From the IMG/VR virus record IMGVR_UViG_3300031707_000001, positions 124,001 to 188,000 of that record: DNA of 64,000 nt; one strand, given 5' to 3'. The position numbers and the translations under genes are program-made. Each line of letters starts with the position of its first letter. Position 1 is the stretch's first letter. The notes below the pieces were generated by a model, which searched no databases, was not told the origin of the DNA, and saw only the letters and a program-made list of their open reading frames with translations. Below, piece after piece: positions 31,917 through 43,068 of the stretch.

Positions 31917-34742
31917 TTATGCTCCTGCGATCATTCGTGGTAGCTGTACTACGTTGCTATTCGTTACCATACGTAAAACAATAGGCTCACCAATAATGTA
32001 TTTGTTCCAAATCATTCTGTCAAGAATCCAATACCGGTTGCGGTCGATGTCGAAGTCTTTGGCGGGGTGAATATGGTTGTAGCGTTCAAAATCTACACTA
32101 AGACTAGGCGGATTGAATACATTGCTATGTCGTCCCCACACATTTACAATATTGACTACACGGTGATCTATACAAACACAATCTTGCATCACGAAGATAG
32201 TAGGCAGATTGTCCTGGAGTTCTTTTTGGGTTGGAAATCCTTGGACGACACGAATAGGGCTCTTGTTCTCTGAAATTACTTCACCTAAGGCTTGCATGAA
32301 CATGTAGATGCAACTGATGCCATTGGCGGTGTAATAGTGCTTGATTACGTTTTCCATTTTCGTGTTGATGGGAACCCCAAGCGTACGGCACATGAGATGG
32401 TAAGCAGCCACGGCCGGAATTTCGGTATTGCGAAAGTCAGAGCGTTCTTCCACCGTCAATGTTTGGCTGGTTAATTCAAGCAGGATGCCAGGCAAGCTGG
32501 CTTGAAGTTGCATAATGTCTTCTGGTGCCAACGTATAGGTCTGTTGGGCCGTATAATCCGGGGTATCGATAAAGCTGATGCGGCTGTCACCCGTCAAAGC
32601 GATTGCAACTTCACTGTCAACAACTGATATGAGATTGACATCCAGTTCACCCAAAAGCTGCTTAATGCGATTGCAGGAAATATTGGGAAGTATCTGTATG
32701 CATGGCAGTGCGCCCAACTGCGATAGCTTCGCCAGATATTGTGTTACCTTTACGCTGGGCATGCGGGATACCTCATCGATATCGGCAAAGAGTTGATTCA
32801 GTTGTAGGTAAATAGGTGTCCAGATACCGGGGGTGGGTTCAACAAACAGCAAATGCTGTGGCACAGGCATTACCTTGTTTTCGTGACGGATTAGAGCGGC
32901 GATCAGATTATGTACGATGTGGCAAAAAGCGAATAAAAATCCGGCGATGTAAGGGTTTGTTTCGGCAACTTCCAGAAGTCTGCGCATGCTTGTGGACGAA
33001 TCGATAACAGCTGCTTCGTACCGCAATCCGTTGTAAAGCCGTAGAATGTCACGATCCAGTGTGAATACCTGATGTTGAGGCTCGACAAGTTTTCGGGCTG
33101 TATCAAGCACGAAATTTGGAAAATGTATCAGGGAGGAATTCACGCCAAGCGTTACGATTTCGTGGCGTACGTTTTTCCCTTCTGCCAATTTTGCCAGGAT
33201 ATCGGGCCAGGCAAATCCTTTTATTTCATAGAATGCAGGGTAGATCGATAGGCCTTGCCCAATAAAGACGCTACGGACGGCCTGCCGAAGATGGGCGGCC
33301 GATGTGAAAGCGTTCGAATGTAGGACTGCCGTAATAGCTGGGCCATCGCTGTCTGCACGTAATTTACAGACATATTTGATATCTTCACTTCGAGTCAATA
33401 TGCATTCTTCGACGGTGATGGCCACGTTGCTTAGTCGACGTTCTTCATTGTCAAATCCTAATGCCAAAAGTCCTGTGGTCGTCTGACGCAGTTCCCTGCC
33501 ATTAGCCAAACGTATTACGCTTTGTGGAAGCTGTCCGATTGTTTCGAGCAACGTAATCAATTCTGGAGGCACGACCATCGTGGCTGCCTTTTCGAGAAGC
33601 TCCGTACGTTGTTCCTTGGTTACGTTGTTGCTTTCAAAAGCTTTATAGATGACTTCGACATCTTTGTCTTCGATCAACTTGGCGAGCTTGTGTATGATCC
33701 ACGTATTCAAGGCTTCAGCAACGTGGTTGGGCTTAAGTGTTGGCGCTTCCAACGTATGGAGCGGAATGCTTTCCATCGGCCGGCCTTCAGGACCAACAAA
33801 GATAGGTACCTTCTTGTCCGGATGACCTTCAACAACTTCCGGGGCTGAAAATAGATGAAGGGCAAAAGCAAGGCTGAACTTGTATTCCTTGCTCGGCAAA
33901 ACTATGAGCCGTTCGATGTTGCGAAACCGGTGGGGTAACGGTAGGCCAGCCAAGCCAACCAGCGGCGGAGGTCGGGTTGAATATTCAGACCACCGCCGGT
34001 ACAAGTTGCAACAGACCATTTCGCTGGTAGCAGCAAAAAGGTCCTTGGTCGTATCCGAAACGTTGTTTTCCATGAACAGACCGATGTCCTTACGAACGAT
34101 CGGTATGGTTTGACTTGGAAGTGAATCTTCATCAAAATTCTGTACCCGAACATGCGTTACTTGTCCGTTGTACGTGTAGGGGTAAAGCGCACAGTGGGCT
34201 TTGCTGTGAGGTTTGAGTCCACGCAAGACTGGGGGTAAATCGTCTGGAATGAGCAATCCCAGCGTCTTGGGTACGTCATTCAGCGTCTGGCTGCCATATT
34301 GCAGGGCGCCGTGGGCAGCCATTTTATTGCGGAGCTTGGTGCCCTTAAGTGACTTTCTGATAGCGTTTTGTGTCTGAAGAAGGTAGTTGGAAATAGCCAA
34401 CTGGTTGGATTTGGAGTTGCGATACTCGTCTAACTGGCTGCCTGTAAAGTCTTCTTCAAGTATCGAAGCAAGTTCTTGTCCGGGAAGAAATAATCCAAAA
34501 GCTTCGTCCAACGAGATTTTTCGGACCTGCGCCAGCAGCATTACGGCATCCCCACTGAAATTGCAGTGGCTCTCGTTGCAGGTGAAACGCCAGGCGCCAT
34601 GGTCCGGATCACAAGCATCCCGGGCGATTCGAAGTGTATTTCCTAGGCCCGAATGGAGGGGGCAGGGCTGCAACGCTTCGGGTGTCGGATTCGTTATTGT
34701 GCAGCCAAGCTTCGTAAGAAATTCTATCCAGCGAATCTGCAT
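31917..34742 (-). CDS. Large primase-like protein with an N-terminal zinc-binding domain
   Basis: CPLH...FTCNESHCNFSGDAV.L......S..EA resembles the CHC2 zinc finger of DnaG. Downstream catalytic motifs are not recognisable. Confidence 0.5.
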   Translation of the reverse strand: MQIRWIEFLTKLGCTITNPTPEALQPCPLHSGLGNTLRIARDACDPDHGAWRFTCNESHCNFSGDAVMLLAQVRKISLDEAFGLFLPGQELASILEEDFTGSQLDEYRNSKSNQLAISNYLLQTQNAIRKSLKGTKLRNKMAAHGALQYGSQTLNDVPKTLGLLIPDDLPPVLRGLKPHSKAHCALYPYTYNGQVTHVRVQNFDEDSLPSQTIPIVRKDIGLFMENNVSDTTKDLFAATSEMVCCNLYRRWSEYSTRPPPLVGLAGLPLPHRFRNIERLIVLPSKEYKFSLAFALHLFSAPEVVEGHPDKKVPIFVGPEGRPMESIPLHTLEAPTLKPNHVAEALNTWIIHKLAKLIEDKDVEVIYKAFESNNVTKEQRTELLEKAATMVVPPELITLLETIGQLPQSVIRLANGRELRQTTTGLLALGFDNEERRLSNVAITVEECILTRSEDIKYVCKLRADSDGPAITAVLHSNAFTSAAHLRQAVRSVFIGQGLSIYPAFYEIKGFAWPDILAKLAEGKNVRHEIVTLGVNSSLIHFPNFVLDTARKLVEPQHQVFTLDRDILRLYNGLRYEAAVIDSSTSMRRLLEVAETNPYIAGFLFAFCHIVHNLIAALIRHENKVMPVPQHLLFVEPTPGIWTPIYLQLNQLFADIDEVSRMPSVKVTQYLAKLSQLGALPCIQILPNISCNRIKQLLGELDVNLISVVDSEVAIALTGDSRISFIDTPDYTAQQTYTLAPEDIMQLQASLPGILLELTSQTLTVEERSDFRNTEIPAVAAYHLMCRTLGVPINTKMENVIKHYYTANGISCIYMFMQALGEVISENKSPIRVVQGFPTQKELQDNLPTIFVMQDCVCIDHRVVNIVNVWGRHSNVFNPPSLSVDFERYNHIHPAKDFDIDRNRYWILDRMIWNKYIIGEPIVLRMVTNSNVVQLPRMIAGA

Positions 34743-35302
34743 AACGTATTCCAGCGTTTTAGATAATCAATTGCTCGTTCTAAATACTTCGTGTTGTCGT
34801 GGAAGCTGCCCAGGCCTTTATTACAAGCACTACATAATATACCTCGAACTTGGTTGGTGTTGTGGTCGTGGTCCGTACTTTTATCTCGATCGTTTATAAA
34901 AACTTGTTGGCATATAGCACAAACACCATCCTGTTCAGAAATAAGTTTATTGCGCTCATCTAAGGTTATACCATAGTGTTTTTGAAAATACCAGTTTCTT
35001 CGTTGTTGGGTAGTACGTATTGTCCAATCATGATGCCACTTCCTTGCATATTCAAGATGATTTTGTCGCCAAAGTGTGGCCTTAACGCTTTGGTTTTTTC
35101 TATGACATTTTGGGCAACGGTACTGCGTTTTTCCGGTTTTGGTAAACGGTTTGTGGCAGTCTATACAAGTTGGAATTTTTTGCGTTCTAATTTTGTTACA
35201 AAGTTCAATACATTCAGAACAACGTTTCTGATAACGTATTCTGAAAAATTTCGTATGACAAAGTGTGCAGGTTGAAGTTTTAGGCATATGCTTCTTTTTC
35301 AT
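34724..35302 (-). CDS. Endonuclease VII-family HNH homing endonuclease
   Basis: YGITL...QDGVCAIC...DHDH.T.QVRGILC..CNKGLG.F.DN...L.RAI.YL; N-terminal CxxC repeats. Confidence 0.92.
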   Translation of the reverse strand: MKKKHMPKTSTCTLCHTKFFRIRYQKRCSECIELCNKIRTQKIPTCIDCHKPFTKTGKTQYRCPKCHRKNQSVKATLWRQNHLEYARKWHHDWTIRTTQQRRNWYFQKHYGITLDERNKLISEQDGVCAICQQVFINDRDKSTDHDHNTNQVRGILCSACNKGLGSFHDNTKYLERAIDYLKRWNTLCRFAG

Positions 35303-35306
35303 TGTT

Positions 35307-35444
35307 CTACTTGCCCTTGTTTCGTACTCTAGGCTTATTCCAATATGGACTTTTGCAGCGTGGACACCAACGTGGTATTTGTACCGTTCGTGGTAACCAC
35401 TGATGCTGACAACGATTGCATTGGACGCTTGATACTGTTATCAT
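35307..35444 (-). CDS. 45-aa zinc-ribbon protein, probably leaderless
   Basis: MITVSSVQCNRCQHQWLPRTVQIPRWCPRCKSPYWNKPRVRNKGK, translated by hand; not in the ORF track. Confidence 0.85.
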   Translation of the reverse strand: MITVSSVQCNRCQHQWLPRTVQIPRWCPRCKSPYWNKPRVRNKGK

Positions 35445-35450
35445 GTCTAA

Positions 35451-35480
35451 ATATTACTATGATCGTATGTTCTCTGTCAA
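35451..35480 (-). promoter_or_regulatory. Sigma-70 promoter for the minus-strand operon
   Basis: TTGACA-18 nt-TAATAT, with the ATG 6 nt downstream. Confidence 0.65.
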
Positions 35481-35559
35481 TTACTTTTCTAACATTTGCA
35501 ACTAGACAGTATAAAGTAAGCGTGATAAGCTATTGACGAACTTAAAAAAGGAGTTGCGT

Positions 35560-36657
35560 ATGGACTTGCTACACGATCTGAGTGGACGACGTTGGCTGGA
35601 ACTTGCTGATCGGCATGAAGCTATCATACCTGCGTATGTGATGACTTCGGAAATGCCAAGCAAAGAAGCTGCAGCAGAATTGGAAGATGCGTTGTTTGCG
35701 GATCCTGCTCGCAGACTCTTTCCTGTTGATACACCAGCGGCGACCTGGTTATCTGCAGCCTACTTCTTGAAAAATGCAGCAACACTTCCTTACAAGAAAG
35801 ACGAAAAGGCTTTCGTCTTGGCTCGCATCGAAAAGGCGGCCGAAATCCATGGGGTCAGGGGTGATACAGAAAAGATTGCCGCAGCCATTCAAGCAGAGGA
35901 TGGTACGGAAAAGCAAGCCGAAGATAACGATGAGAATTACGGCTGGGTCATGGTAAGCGAAGCCACGGGACAGGTACTTGCACGCAAGTATCCCATGTTC
36001 GACGATCGTGGCGTCAAAATGGCTAGCTCGTACTTCGACGAAAACCGCAGTCATTATCCGATGGCCATACGCCGGACGATCGCCCGCAACATTATGAAGC
36101 GGGCAGAAGTCCACGGCGTTGGCATCGATGAACTACATCCTTCGGTGTTGCGTGAGGCCGGCTATGGAATTCCTCGCAAGGACGTATTGATGGAGGAAAT
36201 CCTGGAACGAGCCTACCTGACCAAGGACGCTGAATGTGCTGTTCTACTGGCCAACATCAACGAGATGATTGCTGCTCTGCCGGAAGAAGACATAGCACAG
36301 AGCCTGGACAAGATTGCTGAAGTCATTGAGGCTTACGACAGGACGTCGGATCTTACTCGTTACTACGGCACGAAGATCCTGATGCCTGCCGACTTCCTGT
36401 TCGACGTCAATATGAAGACGGCGGAGGAACTTGTGGCCGATGCGGTTGAGTTGGACCGTCATGTGTTCAGCCTGACCAAGTTGGCGGAATTACCGGCGCA
36501 GATGTACCAGGAAATTCTTGGCGAAGAGTTTGCTAAGGCAATCGTCAAGTCCGGTACGACGCAGGTCGACAAGGAAAAGCTTGCCGATAATCTGTACTCG
36601 TTACCCAAGCCGGATAAAGTTGCCCTCGAAGAGCATCTCGCCGAAATCTTCGGTTAA
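35560..36657 (+). CDS. Hypothetical protein with an internal duplication and many K-x-A motifs (possible head morphogenesis)
   Basis: AAGGAG RBS. Repeated unit RLFPVD...SAAYF...IEKAAEIHGV / RKYPMFD...ASSYF...IMKRAEVHGV. Confidence 0.65.
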   Translation: MDLLHDLSGRRWLELADRHEAIIPAYVMTSEMPSKEAAAELEDALFADPARRLFPVDTPAATWLSAAYFLKNAATLPYKKDEKAFVLARIEKAAEIHGVRGDTEKIAAAIQAEDGTEKQAEDNDENYGWVMVSEATGQVLARKYPMFDDRGVKMASSYFDENRSHYPMAIRRTIARNIMKRAEVHGVGIDELHPSVLREAGYGIPRKDVLMEEILERAYLTKDAECAVLLANINEMIAALPEEDIAQSLDKIAEVIEAYDRTSDLTRYYGTKILMPADFLFDVNMKTAEELVADAVELDRHVFSLTKLAELPAQMYQEILGEEFAKAIVKSGTTQVDKEKLADNLYSLPKPDKVALEEHLAEIFG

Positions 36658-36684
36658 CAACCGTCGATCAAACAGGAGGTGCTC

Positions 36685-37350
36685 ATGATGGGGGAACTCC
36701 AGGCTAAGCAATCTGCTCTCCAGACGCCTGAGACCCTGGCCACCGTGGTCCATGCCATTGTGCGAAAGCAATATGGCGAGGACGCATATGGTTGGGATCC
36801 AACGACGGTCTTTCTGGAATTGCAAGCAGACTTCCATGCCGACGTCGATACAACAGTCTTGGACCGCTGGTCAGCCATTTCGGTTATCATGACCAGTGAT
36901 GCTTTCTTCAAACGGTTGGATGCCTTCATGGGCATTTGCAATACGCTATCGTCTGGAGAACCGTTTTTCCAAGTATTCGACCCGGTAACGACGGAAGAGG
37001 TAGCTTGGGCTGTTGCTGAGGTTTCCTTGAATAGGGAACTTCTGCCGTTCAGTTATCCCATTCGGAAGTACATGAGGATGATGCTGGAGCAAGACGGTTA
37101 TGATCCAATGAACTATCCTGATCTCTTTCAGGAAATCATGGGGAAGAACCCCCGTGCCGAGGAAATCCGGAAGATCATTGGTCCGAGTACAAATCCGAAC
37201 CAAGGAAACATCGACGGTTATATTGACGAGCAACTGAAGGATATGGTATACCAGCTCAACAAGATTCCTGATTTGAAGGATTTGGATGACATCATCCTAC
37301 AACGTTCAATGGACGAATTTGTTGGAACAGTGGTAAAGAAAGTCGTGTAA
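36685..37350 (+). CDS. Hypothetical protein
   Basis: AGGAGG RBS; acidic, 221 aa. Confidence 0.7.
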   Translation: MMGELQAKQSALQTPETLATVVHAIVRKQYGEDAYGWDPTTVFLELQADFHADVDTTVLDRWSAISVIMTSDAFFKRLDAFMGICNTLSSGEPFFQVFDPVTTEEVAWAVAEVSLNRELLPFSYPIRKYMRMMLEQDGYDPMNYPDLFQEIMGKNPRAEEIRKIIGPSTNPNQGNIDGYIDEQLKDMVYQLNKIPDLKDLDDIILQRSMDEFVGTVVKKVV

Positions 37351-37354
37351 TATC

Positions 37355-38173
37355 ATGGCAGAGTACGCTCCAGTAACACTCGGGGTGCAAAAGCAGGGAC
37401 CAAACGTCGCTCTGATCAAACAAGGTCAACCGAACCTGTGCAGGCAACCTGAGACGCCTTCGTGTTTACCTGTGGCCGTTACTGGAGCCACTCTGTCCAA
37501 TGCAGCAAAGAAGTATTGTTACAAATGCAGACAAGATGTTTCAATAACCTGTTTTCGTAAAAATCGGGCTAAGAAAGACGGATTAAGTGATGAGTGTAAT
37601 TCGTGTCATGCCAAATATCAAAGGTACCGATGGTGGCATCAAACGATTACAGAACAAATGCGTACTAAGCATTATGCTAGAAACAAGCGTTATAGTAAGA
37701 CAGAAAAAGGAAAACTGAGTCATAGAAGAAGCTATATTAAATGGGCGCATAGTGCGAAAGGTTTGCTTTCTATTCGGCGTAGTATCAAAAAATACAATAG
37801 TTCACCAACAGGACGTTTGCGTTGCAGTTTGACACAGCACTTGTATCGAGCATTAAAACAAAATAAAGCAGGGCGTGCTTGGGAACAATTGGTGGGATAC
37901 AATGTGCATCAGTTAAAGGCGCATTTAGAATCTCAATTTGAGCCTGGTATGACTTGGGAAAATTATGGCCGAAATGGTTGGAATATAGACCACATTGTTC
38001 CAATCGTTGAGTTTAGTAAATATGCATTTGATTCCTCAGCAATCCAAACGTGTTTTGCACTTTCCAATCTTATGCCTCGTTGGGAGACTACCAAGATTGC
38101 ACAGACGTATGGAAGCGCACAAATTGGAAATTTCAATAAAGGGTCCAAAATACTCCAAGGTATGACAATATGA
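37355..38173 (+). CDS. HNH homing endonuclease
   Basis: CYKC...KDGL...CNSC N-terminal zinc module; LKAHLESQF..GMTWENYG...WNIDHIVP...CF...NL...N..KG. Confidence 0.9.
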   Translation: MAEYAPVTLGVQKQGPNVALIKQGQPNLCRQPETPSCLPVAVTGATLSNAAKKYCYKCRQDVSITCFRKNRAKKDGLSDECNSCHAKYQRYRWWHQTITEQMRTKHYARNKRYSKTEKGKLSHRRSYIKWAHSAKGLLSIRRSIKKYNSSPTGRLRCSLTQHLYRALKQNKAGRAWEQLVGYNVHQLKAHLESQFEPGMTWENYGRNGWNIDHIVPIVEFSKYAFDSSAIQTCFALSNLMPRWETTKIAQTYGSAQIGNFNKGSKILQGMTI

Positions 38174-39924
38174 AAGAATATGCACCAGGAATTGTTAACA
38201 AGGAAAATTATGGGGATCCAACCCGAAGTCTTGAAGCCGGGCAGTTGGCCGATTATGTCCTTCAACACCATACCACACACCGACATCCTAATACGCCTCA
38301 TTTGGATTTACGCATAGGCACACCAGCGACGGGTATGCATTCGTGGGCAATTCCTAAGGCTAAACTTCCAACAGCCGACGAGAAAAATTTAGCTATACAA
38401 ACGCAAATCCATTCCCCCGGATACAATACATTTCAGGGAAGCATTCGTAGTGGCTACGGCGAAGGTTTTGTTCGAAGACAGGATTTAGGAAAAGCACTTT
38501 TAACGAAAGTAACCCCCAACAGCGTATCGTTCACCATTTCTCATACCAAAGTTCCGGTGCGATACTCTTTGATTAGAATGGGAACTCGGGACGGAAGAAA
38601 CGGAAGAGATTGGTTGCTTGTTCACAAAGCTATTCCAAAAACCGTTGAAGGCGTTGGAGACAAGCCCAAGTACAAACTTATTGAGGCGGTCGATTTAGAT
38701 GATGCGCTTGAGCAGGCAACTGAAGTACAGGAAAAAATAGATGGTGCTGGAGGGGTCTACGAAATTGGATCTAAAGGTGAAACCGAAGCCTATAGTGTTA
38801 ATCCCCGGAAAACGGGTGAGCCAATTGTTCATACTGAGCGTACGGGATTGACTGGCGTAAAATCTCCTGAGGCTTTGTCAGGTACGACTCTTAGAGGTGA
38901 AATCTATGCCACGGATCCAAAAGGAAAGGCTATTCCTTTTCAAGAGTTGAGCGGGATTTTGAACTCAACGATCGCTAAAGCAGTAGAAACACGCCGAGTC
39001 AAAAAGCTGAAGATGCAACACGCTATATTCGATATTATTAAACACAAAGGTAAGGACGTATCCCAATTGCCTTTTGAAGAACGTAAGTCCCTTTTGAAGG
39101 AAGTAGTACCGCAGTTACCGTCCGAACACTTTCATTCCCCGCTATCGGCCACGGAAGAAGAGGATAAGACCCGGATGTTGGAAGACATTCGTACCGGAAA
39201 AAATCCCCGAACTTCTGAAGGTATTATCATGCACCTTCCCGGTAATAAGGTGTGGAAGTACAAGTTTCGTCCCGAATCCCGGGGATACGTTACGGGTGTC
39301 TTTCCGGGCAAAGCCGGCCGTACGGGATTGCCTGGCGGCGTAACATTCTCGGAGACCCCAGGCGGTGAAGAACTAGGACACCTTGGCTCAGGTTTCACGG
39401 TAGATGAACTCAAAGATATTGCCAAGAACCTGGAAGCCTACAAGACCAAACCAATGCGAATCACGCACATGGGCAAGTTCCCAGCCGGTACGCTACGAGC
39501 GCCCGTGTTCAGCGGATGGGAGACCGATGTAAAGGAAAGTACTGATATGCGCATGAAGATTTCTCCTTTGGTACGTGCTTTTGTCAAACAGGCTTTGACG
39601 GCCACTACAAGCGGACAGACGGCCGATGCTACAACAGCACCGCAGGCTGGTTATGCCATGAAGCCTTACGGCGATCAAGGCTACGATGCTTCGTTAACGC
39701 CTCAACGGGATCTTGCCCGTACAGGCTCTCCTGGAGCGCAGATACAACCCGGTCCCGAGATCCAACCGTTCTACAATCCGGCAGCAAGACCCGGTGTACC
39801 TGCAGGCGTGGTAGCACGACCTGGGACGGGTACATTGACAGCCAGTGAATCCGGACAAGCCGGGCAGGTCAAGAAATTCCTGACACCAAAAGGTGGTCCA
39901 ATCGCTACAGCAACAGGAACCTAA
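38170..39924 (+). CDS. ATP-dependent DNA ligase fused to an N-terminal LigD-type 3'-phosphoesterase domain
   Basis: PE domain: Q.H.......HLDLR...SWAIPK...LAIQT..H...Y..F.G.I..GYG.G. Ligase motifs: EKIDG, RGEI, FDI, EGII, KYK, GSGFT, LRAPVF. Confidence 0.9.
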   Translation: MKEYAPGIVNKENYGDPTRSLEAGQLADYVLQHHTTHRHPNTPHLDLRIGTPATGMHSWAIPKAKLPTADEKNLAIQTQIHSPGYNTFQGSIRSGYGEGFVRRQDLGKALLTKVTPNSVSFTISHTKVPVRYSLIRMGTRDGRNGRDWLLVHKAIPKTVEGVGDKPKYKLIEAVDLDDALEQATEVQEKIDGAGGVYEIGSKGETEAYSVNPRKTGEPIVHTERTGLTGVKSPEALSGTTLRGEIYATDPKGKAIPFQELSGILNSTIAKAVETRRVKKLKMQHAIFDIIKHKGKDVSQLPFEERKSLLKEVVPQLPSEHFHSPLSATEEEDKTRMLEDIRTGKNPRTSEGIIMHLPGNKVWKYKFRPESRGYVTGVFPGKAGRTGLPGGVTFSETPGGEELGHLGSGFTVDELKDIAKNLEAYKTKPMRITHMGKFPAGTLRAPVFSGWETDVKESTDMRMKISPLVRAFVKQALTATTSGQTADATTAPQAGYAMKPYGDQGYDASLTPQRDLARTGSPGAQIQPGPEIQPFYNPAARPGVPAGVVARPGTGTLTASESGQAGQVKKFLTPKGGPIATATGT

Positions 39925-40319
39925 TGGACGAAGTTACATTACATTTTGTGGATAAGGCGGGCAATGTCAAAGCCGAAGTAGCTGCCGAGATTGCAGAAAC
40001 ACCAGCCGATCGGCGTATGGGGCTTTCCAAGCGAGCATTTCTTCCATCCGGTAGAGGCATGTTTTTTGACAAGGCTGGAGCCTTTTGGATGAAGGATGTC
40101 AACTTTCCATTGGACATCGTTTTCTTGGATAAGCAGGGAACCGTACTTGAGAAACAGCATATGCCACAGGTCGAAGAGCCTACAGCATTGAAGCCACTTT
40201 ATGTGTCTTCGTCCAAGGAAGCTGCACATGCTTTGGAACTGCCGGCTGGCTGGTTTGATCGTCAAGGTTTGGCTGTAGGAATGAAACTTAGGCCAGTAGA
40301 GAGCAGACTGGACAGATGA
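39924..40319 (+). CDS. DUF192-family protein
   Basis: EIAETP..R..GL..R..L....GM.F....FWMKDV.FPLDIVFLD...ALELPAG. Confidence 0.9.
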   Translation: MDEVTLHFVDKAGNVKAEVAAEIAETPADRRMGLSKRAFLPSGRGMFFDKAGAFWMKDVNFPLDIVFLDKQGTVLEKQHMPQVEEPTALKPLYVSSSKEAAHALELPAGWFDRQGLAVGMKLRPVESRLDR

Positions 40320-40337
40320 TAGAAGCTTTGATACTAT
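40309..40337 (+). promoter_or_regulatory. Sigma-70 promoter (extended -10) for the secreted-protein cassette
   Basis: TGGACA-17 nt-TACTAT with TGn. Confidence 0.6.
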
Positions 40338-40376
40338 GGGTTGAAATTGAGTACATTTTGATCAAGGAGAAAACAC

Positions 40377-40766
40377 ATGAATTGGAAGAATGGATTGACC
40401 TCGATAGTCGTTATGTTGGTGGCGTTTTCGATTACAGCATTTGCTCAAACTCCCAGCGGAAACCGGGTGAATAACAGCGAAACGATTTTGATGACCAACA
40501 ATACGGTGAGGATCACGTTGGCCCAGACAACACAACCGGTAAGTCCTGCCCAGGTTGAACTGACGTTCAAGGCTCCGGTAACTGCTACCTTCACCTTCAA
40601 CTATGAGCGTGGGGCTTACACCAATATGGTGATCAACAGGACCCTTACAAACCTGGTAACGTATATTTGGAACTGCCCTCGGGATTTGAAGCTGGTGGGA
40701 AACGATACACTGGTATTCACCAAGTCTGTCAGTGATCGGGCTCAGTTAACGATCAATTGGAAGTAA
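40377..40766 (+). CDS. Small exported beta-rich protein
   Basis: Signal peptide MNWKNGLTSIVVMLVAFSITAFA-Q; AAGGAG RBS. Confidence 0.75.
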   Translation: MNWKNGLTSIVVMLVAFSITAFAQTPSGNRVNNSETILMTNNTVRITLAQTTQPVSPAQVELTFKAPVTATFTFNYERGAYTNMVINRTLTNLVTYIWNCPRDLKLVGNDTLVFTKSVSDRAQLTINWK

Positions 40767-40779
40767 GGAGACAGTATTC

Positions 40780-43068
40780 ATGAAGAAACTGATTCATGTG
40801 TTTTTCGGTTTGTTGTTGGCGGTACTGCCTCTTGCAGCCCAAGAGATTGATAACGGAGCGCCGGTATACGTCGTTGAGATTATCAATGGCGTTCCGTATT
40901 TATCTGGCGCCGGCGGAGGTGGAGGCACCCCGGTCGATCTTACACCATATCTAAAGAAAGACGGTACAATCGCTTATACGGCCGATCAGAACGGCGGCGG
41001 ATTTGGAATTACCAATCTTGGGGCATTGATACCGTTTGGAAGCAATACTGTAAACTTGGGATCGCTGCTACATCCATGGGGAAGCATATATGCAAGCGGG
41101 CATACCATCTATTTGGACGGCATTCCAATGCTTTCGGTATCGAACAGTCAATTAGTTGTAGCATATCCAGTAGCCTCCAGCAATGGAACAACCTACACGA
41201 CAACAGTTGATCTTAGTGGTTTGTCCAATCAAGTTGCAGCCATAGAGGCTCGTACTAACGCCTGGAATACTGGATCCGCTGAAGGCAACTATGCTTCGAA
41301 CTGGATCGGTACGTATGGACCAGTTTTGGCCAGCACAAGTTATGTTGATAATGCTGTGTCCGGATATGCGCCCACCTCATCGATCAATGGAGTCTCTGGG
41401 CGTGTTTCTGCAATCGAAAGCAAAACCAATGACTGGAATACAGCTTATGGTTGGGGCAACCATGCTGTTGCAGGATACGCCGGTACAGGATCTGTGAACG
41501 CCGTTTCGGCGAGAGTTGGTACGATTGAAAGCAAAACCAATGACTGGAATGCTGTCTATTCCTGGATGCAGTCCAATTCTAATGGTTTGAGTTTTGTATT
41601 TTCTCAAACCAACTCGTGGACAGTAGGCGCCTCAGCGGGTAACTATGCATCCAATTGGATCGCAGTCTGGAGTCCAACTCTTGCCAGTACAAACTTTGTT
41701 ACTGATCTTTTGACTGGCTATGCTTCGACCTCAACGGTAAATGCGGTTTCTAGTAGGGTCGGAACCATCGAGGGACAAACTAACGCTTGGAATACAGCTA
41801 CAGCTTATGTAGCAGCAAAGTCGAATAACTGGGATACGGCGTATAACCATCTTTCAACCTTGTTTGCTGGATCGGGTACTACTGGCAATGTAACAAGTGC
41901 CACTGCCAATACCAACCAATACCTTCGTGGCGACGGTACCTGGCAGACTGTTGCAGCCTCAGGGGCTGGCGATGTTTTCAAGGGTAGTAACAATACCTAC
42001 TCTGCCGGAACAACTCAGTCCATGCCATATGCGATTATCAATAACGGATTGGAAGTGTATGGGAACACAATTCATACAAATTGTGGAGTTAGTTTGGGCT
42101 CTACAGATACAACCAAGGCCAAATTTTATGTCAATGGCGAGAGCGGAGCATATACAAACAAGCCTCTTGTCTGGTTCAATAGGAGTGCAGCGGCTACAGG
42201 CCCTATCTTGCAGTGGGGAACCAATGGTGTCCTTCTTGGGAGTATTGATGTGAATGGAAGCGTCTCTGTTCCATCAATAGGTATCTCAAACAATCTTACA
42301 CTCGGTGGGGTTACAGTGAGTTCCTTCTCGACGAACACTCCGATCTTTGCGGATGGCTCCCAGCCATTCAACGCCACTATGAATGCTGGAACTTTCGGAG
42401 TAACGAATCTTGGCACATTGCTTCCATTTGGCAGTAATACCTGTGATCTTGGAAGTGCCGCTCTTCCGTGGAGAAATGCGTATTACGTTTCGCATACGAT
42501 CTATATGGGCGGGTGGCCTATTTCTGTTGACGATGGCACCGGAAAACTCCTTGTACCGGGAGTTCAGTATTCTGCTCCACAATACACTATAAAGTCTGTG
42601 GCCGCTTCTGATATGATGCTTCGTGGTGCCGCTACTGATCCTGCATGGGATGGGCTCAAGGTTCGTATGACCTTCTCTGGGACGAATCTGAACGGGGTGA
42701 GTTTCATTTGCGATCTTCCGCAGTACAGTCCCGAAACCGATATAGTTCCGTTGATCTTGTGGGAAGGAAATGATGTGAATGTTTCCAATGTAATCTGGCA
42801 GATGGATTACATCTGGCGCAATATAGGTGATATTTCTACCTATGGAGATTGGACTACGCTTGCTGTGACTAATGTCAATCCTGCTTTGAAATGGCAATCT
42901 AAGGTATCCCGTTTTCCGACGGTTTCGGGAGCAGGGAAGAATAAGAATTCTGTCATTCAAATCAGACTGCAACGCCGTGGTGACTTGGACGATAACAACG
43001 ATACTGCGAGTCTTCTTTTCTTCGGGCTTAGGTATGCAATCCAAGCCACAGGTGAGGATGCACAATAA
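40780..43068 (+). CDS. Tail-fibre-like protein with a Sec signal peptide
   Basis: MKKLIHVFFGLLLAVLPLAA-Q; fibre motifs YLKKDG...ITNLG, P..SNT.DLGS...W (twice), TAYGWGNHA.AGY, YLRGDGTW. Confidence 0.75.
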   Translation: MKKLIHVFFGLLLAVLPLAAQEIDNGAPVYVVEIINGVPYLSGAGGGGGTPVDLTPYLKKDGTIAYTADQNGGGFGITNLGALIPFGSNTVNLGSLLHPWGSIYASGHTIYLDGIPMLSVSNSQLVVAYPVASSNGTTYTTTVDLSGLSNQVAAIEARTNAWNTGSAEGNYASNWIGTYGPVLASTSYVDNAVSGYAPTSSINGVSGRVSAIESKTNDWNTAYGWGNHAVAGYAGTGSVNAVSARVGTIESKTNDWNAVYSWMQSNSNGLSFVFSQTNSWTVGASAGNYASNWIAVWSPTLASTNFVTDLLTGYASTSTVNAVSSRVGTIEGQTNAWNTATAYVAAKSNNWDTAYNHLSTLFAGSGTTGNVTSATANTNQYLRGDGTWQTVAASGAGDVFKGSNNTYSAGTTQSMPYAIINNGLEVYGNTIHTNCGVSLGSTDTTKAKFYVNGESGAYTNKPLVWFNRSAAATGPILQWGTNGVLLGSIDVNGSVSVPSIGISNNLTLGGVTVSSFSTNTPIFADGSQPFNATMNAGTFGVTNLGTLLPFGSNTCDLGSAALPWRNAYYVSHTIYMGGWPISVDDGTGKLLVPGVQYSAPQYTIKSVAASDMMLRGAATDPAWDGLKVRMTFSGTNLNGVSFICDLPQYSPETDIVPLILWEGNDVNVSNVIWQMDYIWRNIGDISTYGDWTTLAVTNVNPALKWQSKVSRFPTVSGAGKNKNSVIQIRLQRRGDLDDNNDTASLLFFGLRYAIQATGEDAQ
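41416..41550 (+). repeat. 24-bp direct repeat within coding repeats
   Basis: GAAAGCAAAACCAATGACTGGAAT at 41416-41439 and 41527-41550. Confidence 0.85.

What the first reader, a model, noticed from the sequence alone, without database searches (positions are those of the whole stretch)
37356..37499. About 145-nt structured RNA with an arm antisense to the captured gene start
Seen: GCTCCAGTAAC (37367-37377) pairs perfectly with GTTACTGGAGC (37478-37488), extended by CAGAGT/ACTCTG and TGG/CCA. The stem encloses further helices (GGGTG/CGCCT, GCAGG/CCTGT, GACC/GGTC, CAGG/CCTG). It is read in frame as a non-domain N-terminal extension of the HNH. Inference: the element carries about 20 nt complementary to its insertion site. 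This could be a translational silencer of the nuclease (hairpin control of T4 homing endonucleases is established) or, more speculatively, a guide or splicing RNA of an undescribed HNH-RNA system.
Basis: partly seen in the sequence, partly recalled or inferred. Interest (0 to 1): 0.72.

Follow-up and report, generated by a model that had tools for sequence, protein, structure and literature searches.

The report
Hairpin at a homing-endonuclease gene start
The 145-base "structured RNA" is most likely the junction left where a selfish HNH nuclease gene was inserted at the start of a jumbo phage's DNA ligase gene; its one long stem may dampen translation of the nuclease, and nothing supports a guide or splicing RNA.

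Summary
That stem is the only notable structure. The enclosed 100 nt fold like shuffles (z = -0.34). Helices this strong occur at chance rate in the 210-kb phage genome (6 seen, 3-7 in shuffled genomes). The GC-adjusted fold energy ranks only 229th of 6017 windows. There is no Rfam match, no second copy, and no conserved counterpart in 28 distant homologues.

The segment is the first 48 codons of a 272-aa free-standing HNH endonuclease ORF. Homologues start 3-11 residues before the first CxxC. Here the lead is 54 residues, has no homologues, and is predicted disordered. Its first six codons (MAEYAP) resemble the start of the adjacent ligase gene (MKEYAP). They sit where an HNH-free relative has the ligase start.

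The stem buries the AUG: opening energy is 15.7 kcal/mol, 8th of 242 ORF starts. There is no Shine-Dalgarno sequence, and the upstream stop lies 4 nt away.

Best reading: an insertion-junction segment whose hairpin probably damps nuclease translation in cis. Selection for this is unproven. Interest is low.

The parts
36688..37350 (+). Conserved orphan gene (220-223 aa) upstream. It has a strong AGGAGG ribosome site, and its stop TAA (37348-37350) lies 4 nt before the HNH ORF's ATG.
   Evidence: Syntenic homologues occur in L003, L005, L111 and L113.
37355..37373 (+). Start codon plus codons 2-6 (MAEYAP) of the HNH ORF. They resemble the ligase start (MKEYAP, 14 of 19 nt) and occupy the position that the ligase start has in the HNH-free relative L111 (stop, 1 nt, ATG).
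   Evidence: The similarity does not extend past codon 6.
37356..37377 (+). 5' arm of the long-range helix (TGG, CAGAGT, AC loop, GCTCCAGTAAC). It contains the U and G of the AUG and codons 2-8.
37378..37477 (+). Enclosed 100 nt with no homologues and GC content like the resident genome. Its folding is not distinguishable from shuffles. Positions 37397-37417 match 20 of 21 nt, in reverse orientation, an internal part of an unrelated gene 45 kb away (genome 116788-116808).
37478..37499 (+). 3' arm of the helix (GTTACTGGAGC, C, ACTCTG, T, CCA). It ends where the low-GC region homologous to other HNH genes begins.
37355..38173 (+). Free-standing HNH-type homing endonuclease ORF (272 aa). Residues 1-48 are the extension. 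Residues ~51-260 form a zinc ribbon (C55, C58, C81, C84), a helical region and a beta-beta-alpha nuclease core (D212, H213, N238). The stop TGA overlaps the ligase ATG (ATGA).
   Evidence: The relative L004 has the same ATGA overlap.
37500..37502 (+). Out-of-frame ATG (+1) at the spot where homologues have their start codon. No in-frame ATG lies near the CxxC motif. The in-frame alternatives are GTG 37385 and GTG 37472, and neither has a ribosome site.
   Evidence: read from the sequence.
38170..39924 (+). ATP-dependent DNA ligase with a LigD-type phosphoesterase N-domain, the gene whose start the insertion abuts. Codons 1-115 (38170-38515) are mosaic. They are only 52-60% identical to the otherwise close L004 allele, which is 81-89% identical over residues 116-450.

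Best explanation
The 144 nt at 37355-37498 are not an RNA gene. They are the junction segment created when an AT-rich, free-standing HNH homing endonuclease gene was installed directly in front of the DNA ligase gene of a 210-kb jumbo phage.

The segment keeps the resident translation start: the upstream gene's stop, 4 nt, then ATG and six ligase-like codons. About 125 nt of filler with no homologues follow. This is fused in frame to an HNH body that has no start codon of its own, so the segment is translated as a disordered 48-residue N-terminal extension.

The 20-bp inverted repeat at the two ends of the filler forms a long-range mRNA helix that includes the AUG. Its most likely effect is in cis. 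De novo initiation on the nuclease ORF is hindered, so nuclease synthesis is low and depends on ribosomes that terminate at the upstream gene, melt the base of the helix and re-initiate 4 nt downstream. The ATGA overlap at the other end then passes ribosomes on to the ligase.

Shown: the anatomy, the lack of homologues, the occluded start, and the marks of a mobile nuclease. Inferred: that the helix forms in vivo, that it lowers translation, and that it was selected rather than left by the insertion event.
For: Marks of a free-standing homing endonuclease.
- Relatives carry other contents at the same site. L111 has the 215-aa gene's stop, 1 nt, then the ligase ATG. L005 and L113 have a small membrane-protein gene there. 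L003 has a GIY-YIG endonuclease.
- Third-position GC drops from 0.52-0.62 in the upstream gene to 0.28-0.34 in the HNH body, starting at ~37500.
- Ligase codons 1-115 are as diverged from the close relative L004 as from any family member, while residues 116-450 are 81-89% identical. This fits co-conversion linked to distinct HNH alleles (57% identity).

The extension is not part of the HNH family.
- In the alignment of 19 homologues and in 28 further homologous loci, the start lies 3-11 residues before the CxxC motif. Here it lies 54 residues before.
- The peptide has no credible homologue among 1.84 billion representative proteins. The single hit is a 37-stretch repeat protein.
- AlphaFold pLDDT is 41-51 for residues 1-50 and above 90 from residue 51.

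The captured start.

The occluded start.
- MFE structure.
- Opening energy 15.7 kcal/mol, rank 8 of 242.
- No ribosome site in front of any in-frame start, although the phage uses AAGGAG-type sites in at least 53% of long genes.
- A stop-start distance of 4 nt, and an ATGA overlap with the ligase that L004 also has.

Precedent for hairpin-limited translation of T4-type homing endonucleases, and for illegitimate one-sided repair junctions: PMC2988022.
Against: - The helix is no stronger or more frequent than chance helices in this genome, and the interior is unstructured.
- No sequence variation exists to test covariation. The only closer relative is cut off before this segment.
- Neither the phage's other endonuclease genes (opening energy 3-12 kcal/mol) nor 28 distant homologues (median 6.7, none at or above 15.7, Mann-Whitney p = 0.23 against controls) use start occlusion.
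- T4-type hairpins are short local stems over a Shine-Dalgarno site with an internal late promoter. Here there is no Shine-Dalgarno site, the loop is 100 nt, and no promoter was detected.
- Ribosomes translating the extension would keep the helix open once translation is under way.
- No RNA data exist for this phage.
- Codon-usage scoring of the extension cannot tell true coding from an accidental open frame.
Confidence: 0.45

Rival explanations
1. The segment is a pure by-product. The inverted repeat is a chance match or a scar of the insertion event (template switching or filler DNA during illegitimate double-strand-break repair), has no selected role, and has at most an incidental effect on expression.
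For: - Chance-level frequency of such helices.
- Ordinary genome-wide energy rank.
- Unstructured interior.
- No conservation in homologues.
- A 21-nt patch, 20 of 21 identical, to the antisense of an unrelated gene of the same genome (BLAST E about 1e-3). This is what filler DNA would look like.
- The arms sit exactly at the borders of the filler.
- One-sided illegitimate repair with microhomology junctions is described for T4 intron and endonuclease acquisition (PMC2988022).
Against: - The helix starts within 1 nt of the AUG of a nuclease gene that lacks a ribosome site, and the start ranks 8th of 242 for occlusion. A random helix landing there is unlikely; my rough estimate is a few per cent at most.
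- The flanks of the 21-nt patch show no significant similarity.
- The profile of that gene family does not match the segment.
Confidence: 0.4
2. The segment is an in-frame miniature palindromic element, of the Rickettsia palindromic element or Correia type, that inserted into the 5' end of the nuclease gene.
For: The unit from TGG to CCA (37356-37499) is 144 nt, a multiple of three. It is bounded by ~20-nt imperfect inverted repeats and is read through as protein. The comparison with Rickettsia palindromic elements rests on my own knowledge.
Against: - It is single-copy in the 210-kb genome.
- No exact-arm copies occur in the viral or prokaryotic genome collections, and there is no blastn match in the phage records.
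- No target-site duplication is visible.
- Removing the unit does not restore an in-frame start.
Confidence: 0.05
3. The ~20-bp helix is a processing site for a double-strand-specific RNase (RNase III type). Cleavage would separate the upstream gene's message from the nuclease-ligase message and remove the nuclease's start.
For: This rests only on geometry: about two turns of near-continuous duplex at an inter-cistronic border. That phages use RNase III sites between cistrons is from my own knowledge.
Against: There are no RNA data, no conservation, and helix strength at chance level. The host is unknown.
Confidence: 0.05
4. The segment is a trans- or cis-acting functional RNA of a new HNH-RNA system: a guide RNA, a ribozyme or intron, or a ribosome-bypass signal like T4 gene 60 with mobA.
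For: Only the co-location of an HNH gene with a hairpin. A mobile cassette of mobA plus an RNA bypass element exists in T4 (abstract of bioRxiv 10.1101/2022.08.31.505936, seen).
Against: - No Rfam match and no tRNA or tmRNA.
- The interior folds like shuffles.
- The 3' arm does not match the ligase start.
- The nuclease has no RuvC or other guide-binding module.
- The flanking genes are independent genes that end and start at the same places in relatives.
- No joints appear in metagenome contigs.
- No conservation in homologues.
Confidence: 0.02

Closest known systems
Hairpin-limited translation of T4-type homing endonucleases (I-TevI, I-TevII, I-TevIII, segB, mobE of Aeh1), as reviewed in PMC2988022
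   Same: A selfish nuclease gene sits on a polycistronic phage message, and its initiation region is buried in a stable RNA helix. The expected outcome is low or delayed nuclease synthesis.
   Different: The T4 cases are short local hairpins over a consensus Shine-Dalgarno site, with a late promoter inside the structure. Here the helix is long-range (100-nt loop) and covers the AUG and codons 2-8 rather than a ribosome site (none exists). No internal promoter was found. Relief is proposed to come from termination-reinitiation. None of this is tested, and the helix is statistically unremarkable.
Free-standing HNH homing endonucleases of phages (Mob family) and intronless homing with co-conversion of flanking markers
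   Same: - An HNH gene wedged between conserved genes.
- Presence/absence and replacement polymorphism among relatives.
- Deviant base composition.
- A mosaic neighbouring gene.
   Different: Its family is a distinct, unannotated zinc-ribbon HNH group: no Pfam hit, PHROG 1035 at 1e-8. Cleavage and target are untested. It carries a 48-residue lead, without homologues, that no homologue has.
[quoted passage not shown]
   Same: - A junction at short homology: a 19-nt imperfect direct repeat of the ligase start on both sides of the cassette.
- Filler sequence of unclear origin.
- A retained piece of the recipient's start.
   Different: This is inferred only from anatomy, because no donor or recipient pair is available. 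The filler shares just one 21-nt patch with another genome site.
IscB/IsrB-type HNH or RuvC nucleases with omega RNA (HEARO)
   Same: An HNH domain protein lies next to a structured non-coding-looking segment.
   Different: No HEARO or other Rfam match and no RuvC or bridge-helix module. The 'RNA' lies inside the ORF and has no significant internal structure.
T4 mobA plus the gene 60 ribosome-bypass cassette
   Same: An HNH endonuclease travels together with an RNA-level element at a gene border.
   Different: There is no split host gene here. The upstream protein ends where its homologues end. No take-off/landing arrangement is supported by any data.

Membership tests
Free-standing HNH homing endonuclease gene | HNH (beta-beta-alpha-metal) nuclease motif | tested here: met
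   D212-H213 and N238 are invariant in the alignment of 20 sequences. PHROG 1035 'endonuclease VII' matches at 1e-8. The model has a beta-beta-alpha element at residues 209-251 with high pLDDT. The PDB fold search gave only weak hits to beta-beta-alpha nucleases, all with E > 1.
Free-standing HNH homing endonuclease gene | Sporadic presence between conserved genes, with empty or differently occupied sites in relatives | tested here: met
   L111 has the upstream gene's stop, 1 nt, then the ligase ATG. L005 and L113 have a small membrane-protein gene there. L003 has a GIY-YIG gene. L004 has a diverged HNH allele.
Free-standing HNH homing endonuclease gene | Site-specific cleavage of the nuclease-free allele and gene conversion | not testable with these tools
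   Only indirect evidence: the mosaic ligase codons 1-115 and the low-GC3 tract.
T4-type translational control hairpin of homing endonucleases | A stable RNA structure sequesters the ribosome binding site and/or start codon | tested here: inconclusive
   The AUG and codons 2-8 lie in a 20-bp helix, and the opening energy of 15.7 kcal/mol ranks 8th of 242. But there is no Shine-Dalgarno site to sequester, and the helix is at chance level genome-wide.
T4-type translational control hairpin of homing endonucleases | A late promoter inside the structure gives a transcript that lacks the 5' arm | tested here: not met
   No sigma-70-like promoter lies on the + strand near 37356-37499. Promoters specific to this phage are unknown, so this is a weak negative.
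T4-type translational control hairpin of homing endonucleases | Structure conserved or covarying among related endonuclease genes | tested here: not met
   28 distant homologues have accessible starts and no long lead. The copies in other samples are identical. The closer allele is truncated, so close relatives could not be tested.
Known RNA families (group I intron, HEARO/omega RNA, riboswitches, sRNAs) | Match to a curated covariance model | tested here: not met
   Rfam 15 at E <= 1 over 34000-41000 gave only two chance-level hits elsewhere in that stretch. ARAGORN found nothing.
Group I intron carrying an HNH ORF | It interrupts one gene whose exons join into a conserved product | tested here: not met
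   The flanking ORFs are two separate conserved genes in all relatives. The HNH stop overlaps the ligase ATG, which leaves no room for a 3' intron part.
Miniature inverted-repeat or palindromic element | Multiple copies with conserved terminal inverted repeats | tested here: not met
   Single-copy in the genome. No exact-arm match in viral contigs or genome contigs.
Pseudogene fragment of the ligase 5' end | Homology to the ligase N-domain beyond the first codons | tested here: not met
   The profile of ligase N-termini scores -0.8 bits, and 774 of 3000 shuffles do as well. Only the window's own ligase gives a pairwise signal, and it is confined to MxEYAP.

The most novel reading that the evidence does not exclude
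The nuclease gene has inserted itself into a chain of translationally coupled genes. It took over the ligase's coupled start site (stop, 4 nt, ATG, six ligase codons). It gates its own synthesis with a long-range helix that only ribosomes terminating on the upstream gene can open. It then hands ribosomes on to the ligase through an ATGA overlap. That would be a start-codon-sequestering, coupling-dependent control mode not described for homing endonucleases, and the helix would be a selected part of the mobile cassette.
Probability: 0.15. Interest if true: 0.4.

Novelty: new member of a known kind. Interest (0 to 1): 0.2.

Why it matters
If the helix does control the nuclease, it adds a variant (start-codon burial plus termination-reinitiation) to the known ways phage homing endonucleases are kept at low dose. 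It would do so in an uncultured sediment jumbo phage far from T4.

The more solid value is anatomical. The locus shows a hot spot for selfish nucleases between two conserved genes, a mosaic ligase 5' end consistent with co-conversion, and a junction with a retained host start and filler DNA. Together these record how such a gene lands at a new site.

As a candidate new RNA class it does not hold up.

Tried and rejected
- **Known RNA families.** Rfam at E <= 1 and ARAGORN found nothing.
- **Group I intron or intein.** Rejected: the flanks are separate genes in relatives and there is no model match.
- **Guide RNA of IscB type.** Rejected: no RuvC module, no HEARO match, and the arm does not match the ligase start.
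- **Multi-copy element.** Single-copy in the genome. No exact arms in the viral or prokaryotic collections. No blastn match in phage records.
- **Decayed copy of the ligase 5' end.** I saw an apparent R-x-P-x-T-P match by eye, but profile and pairwise tests were negative beyond codon 6.
- **Remnant of the small membrane-protein gene** that relatives carry at this site. Negative in all six frames.
- **Homologues of the 53-residue lead.** None credible.
- **Relation to 'gene X' (genome 116402-117220).**
  - 20 of 21 nt match in reverse orientation, and the protein-level local score is 52 against 25.7 +/- 4.2 for shuffles.
  - The DNA flanks are not significant and the family profile finds nothing.
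  - A forward-orientation similarity is marginal (p 0.02-0.07).
  - I kept this only as a possible filler patch.
- **Coding test of the extension.** Inconclusive: 12th percentile of true coding windows, but 4-36% of stop-free non-coding frames score as high.
- **Comparative structure test.** Impossible: other samples carry identical copies, and both contigs of the nearest allele break inside the HNH gene.
- **Transcript evidence.** No RNA runs hold the phage. Laying metagenome contigs showed no joints or empty-site allele and was fragmentary.
- **Promoter and terminator scan.** Nothing relevant.
- **Start occlusion as a family or phage-wide habit.** Not seen.
- **Ribosome bypass of the T4 gene 60 kind.** Considered and dropped for lack of any supporting feature.

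Full report
**Setting.** The window is bases 124001-188000 of a 210,732-bp virus record with direct terminal repeats, from a sediment metagenome. Around the finding the genes are as follows:
- a 941-aa gene (minus strand);
- an endonuclease VII-like HNH gene (34724-35302, minus strand) in an AT-rich island;
- a DUF6582 gene (35533-36657);
- a conserved 220-223-aa gene without annotation (36688-37350);
- the 272-aa ORF 37355-38173;
- an ATP-dependent DNA ligase with a LigD-type N-domain (38170-39924);
- a DUF192 gene.

**The observation.**
- The stem is real and lies at the stated coordinates: 3 + 6 + 11 base pairs join 37356-37377 to 37478-37499.
- The 155-nt stretch folds at -59.2 kcal/mol, z = -3.71 against dinucleotide shuffles. 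The minus strand gives z = -2.05.
- That signal comes from the outer helix alone. The enclosed 100 nt fold at z = -0.34, and 74 of 200 shuffles fold as well. The 'further helices' are therefore ordinary.
- I placed the helix in its genome.
  - Exact 11-mer inverted pairs with 20-300-nt spacers give 18 distinct helices, against 8-21 raw pairs in shuffled genomes.
  - Helices at least as stable as this one (-29.4 kcal/mol) number 6, against 3-7 in six block-shuffled genomes.
  - The GC-adjusted fold energy ranks 229th of 6017 windows.
- A reader of 64 kb should expect about one such helix by chance.
- What is not expected by chance is its placement. It begins 1 nt after the A of a start codon and ends where homology to other HNH genes and the low-GC region begin.

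**What the segment is.**
- The ORF is an HNH nuclease. The alignment has invariant C55, C58, C84, D212, H213 and N238, with C81 nearly invariant.
- PHROG 1035 matches at 1e-8, and there is no Pfam hit.
- The model is confident from residue 51: a zinc ribbon, helical hairpins and a beta-beta-alpha element. The PDB fold search gave nothing significant.
- Its 98 database homologues cover at most 86% of it. In the alignment and in 28 further loci, the start lies 3-11 residues before the first CxxC. Here it lies 54 residues before.
- Residues 1-48 have no credible homologue among 1.84 billion representative proteins and have pLDDT 41-51.
- No in-frame ATG lies near the CxxC. The ATG at 37500 is out of frame. 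None of the three in-frame starts (ATG 37355, GTG 37385, GTG 37472) has a ribosome site, although 63 of 118 long genes of the phage do.
- ATG 37355 lies 4 nt after the upstream stop, and two independent gene callers chose it. It is the likely start, so the segment is probably translated.
- Codon scoring could not decide whether it evolved as coding sequence.

**Marks of a mobile nuclease.** Relatives found through the ligase and the DUF6582 gene keep the gene order but differ at this one spot.
- L111 has the upstream stop, 1 nt, then the ligase ATG.
- L005 and L113 have a 90-98-aa membrane-protein gene there.
- L003 has a GIY-YIG endonuclease.
- L004/L011 have a diverged allele of the same HNH (57% identity over the part available) with the same ATGA overlap onto the ligase.
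- Third-position GC is 0.52-0.62 in the upstream gene, 0.50 in the extension, 0.28-0.34 in the HNH body and 0.30-0.44 in the first ~900 nt of the ligase.
- The ligase is mosaic. Against the L004 allele, residues 116-450 are 81-89% identical. Residues 1-115 are only 52-60% identical, no closer than to distant family members. The N-domain of the L004 allele is nearer to other phages than to this one.
- This is what homing with co-conversion of the neighbouring gene would leave.

**The 'captured gene start'.**
- The first six codons of the HNH ORF (MAEYAP) resemble those of the ligase (MKEYAP). Identity is 14 of 19 nt, and three of the five differences are synonymous third positions. Only 4 of 2000 shuffles reach the local alignment score.
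- They sit where the empty-site relative has the ligase start.
- The resemblance stops there. A profile of ligase N-termini scores the extension at -0.8 bits, no better than shuffles. No other ligase gives a pairwise signal.
- The rest of the segment is also not a remnant of the small membrane-protein gene.
- One oddity: 37397-37417 match 20 of 21 nt, in reverse orientation, inside an unrelated gene 45 kb away (E about 1e-3). There is short protein-level similarity on the minus strand. The flanks and a family profile do not support more.
- I read the segment as a junction: the resident start, then filler of mixed or unknown origin, then the incoming gene. Illegitimate one-sided repair with microhomology junctions is described for T4 (PMC2988022).

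**Function of the helix.**
- The 3' arm pairs with the ORF's own start, not with the true ligase start.
- Opening positions -12 to +13 around ATG 37355 costs 15.7 kcal/mol. That ranks 8th of 242 ORF starts, where the median is 8.1 and the SD 3.3.
- With no ribosome site and a 4-nt stop-start gap, the simplest mechanism is that free ribosomes cannot initiate. Ribosomes finishing the upstream gene can melt the helix base and re-initiate. The nuclease ORF then feeds the ligase through the ATGA overlap.
- This works like the hairpin control known for I-TevI, segB and mobE (PMC2988022), but it is not the same device. There is no sequestered Shine-Dalgarno site, the loop is 100 nt, and no internal promoter was found.
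- Support is only thermodynamic. The phage's seven other endonuclease genes have open starts, at 3-12 kcal/mol. The distant homologues do not differ from control genes (median 6.7 against 5.9, p = 0.23; none reaches 15.7).
- Copies of the phage in other samples are identical here, so covariation cannot be assessed.
- No RNA data exist. Laid metagenome contigs showed no joints.

**Rivals.**
- A chance or scar origin without a selected role is almost as likely as the control reading. The two are compatible: a scar can still depress translation.
- An in-frame palindromic element is unlikely, because the segment is single-copy with no copies elsewhere.
- An RNase III site is possible but untested.
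- A guide, splicing or bypass RNA has nothing in its favour.

**Verdict.** The stem is real. The 'structured RNA' is not supported as an RNA gene. The segment is the junction and N-terminal lead of a free-standing HNH homing endonuclease at the start of the ligase gene, and it may damp translation in cis. Novelty: a new member of a known kind. Interest is low (0.2).

Noticed in passing
window 34700-35500: A second selfish nuclease: a 192-aa endonuclease VII-type HNH gene (34724-35302, minus strand) in an AT-rich island (GC 0.36-0.40) between the 941-aa gene and the DUF6582 gene. A 45-aa zinc-ribbon ORF lies beside it (35307-35444, minus strand). Relatives L005 and L111 have only a short spacer there.
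   Followed up: partly
window 38170-38515 (ligase codons 1-115): The ligase is mosaic. Its phosphoesterase N-domain is 52-60% identical to the otherwise 81-89% identical L004 allele, and the L004 N-domain is closer (77-78%) to more distant phages. This fits repeated co-conversion next to different HNH alleles.
   Followed up: yes
L003:2057-2860; L005:5722-5994; L113:4700-4996: The spot downstream of the conserved ~220-aa gene is a variable site. It holds a GIY-YIG endonuclease with repeated NUMOD-like motifs in L003, a small two-helix membrane protein in L005 and L113, nothing in L111, and the HNH gene here.
   Followed up: partly
window 37397-37417 and genome G000:C1:116788-116808 (L114:2289-2309): A 21-nt stretch inside the extension is 20 of 21 identical, in reverse orientation, to the coding sequence for WIRATFGP in a 272-aa zinc-ribbon protein without annotation that has 27 homologues. 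It may be filler DNA captured at the junction, or chance (E about 1e-3).
   Followed up: yes
window 39924-40319 and proteins P0101, P0103, P0111: The DUF192 gene after the ligase is a separate ORF here, with a one-base overlap. In several relatives it is fused to the ligase, and some of those also carry 2'-5' RNA ligase-like domains.
   Followed up: no
window 37876-38009: In four sediment metagenomes, contig depth over the conserved HNH core is 5-10 times that of the flanks, with many diverging loose ends. Many different HNH genes of this family coexist in those samples, which probably explains why contigs of the related allele break inside the gene.
   Followed up: partly
genome G000:C1 58253, 60030, 88779, 114686, 137721, 202068: The phage carries at least six further HNH or GIY-YIG genes outside the studied locus. 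Most lack a clear ribosome binding site but have accessible starts.
   Followed up: partly
L003:4330-5379: The related 7.7-kb viral contig carries a 349-aa ORF that looks like a TnpB/OrfB-type transposon nuclease (C-terminal zinc ribbon), downstream of the DUF192-containing gene.
   Followed up: no
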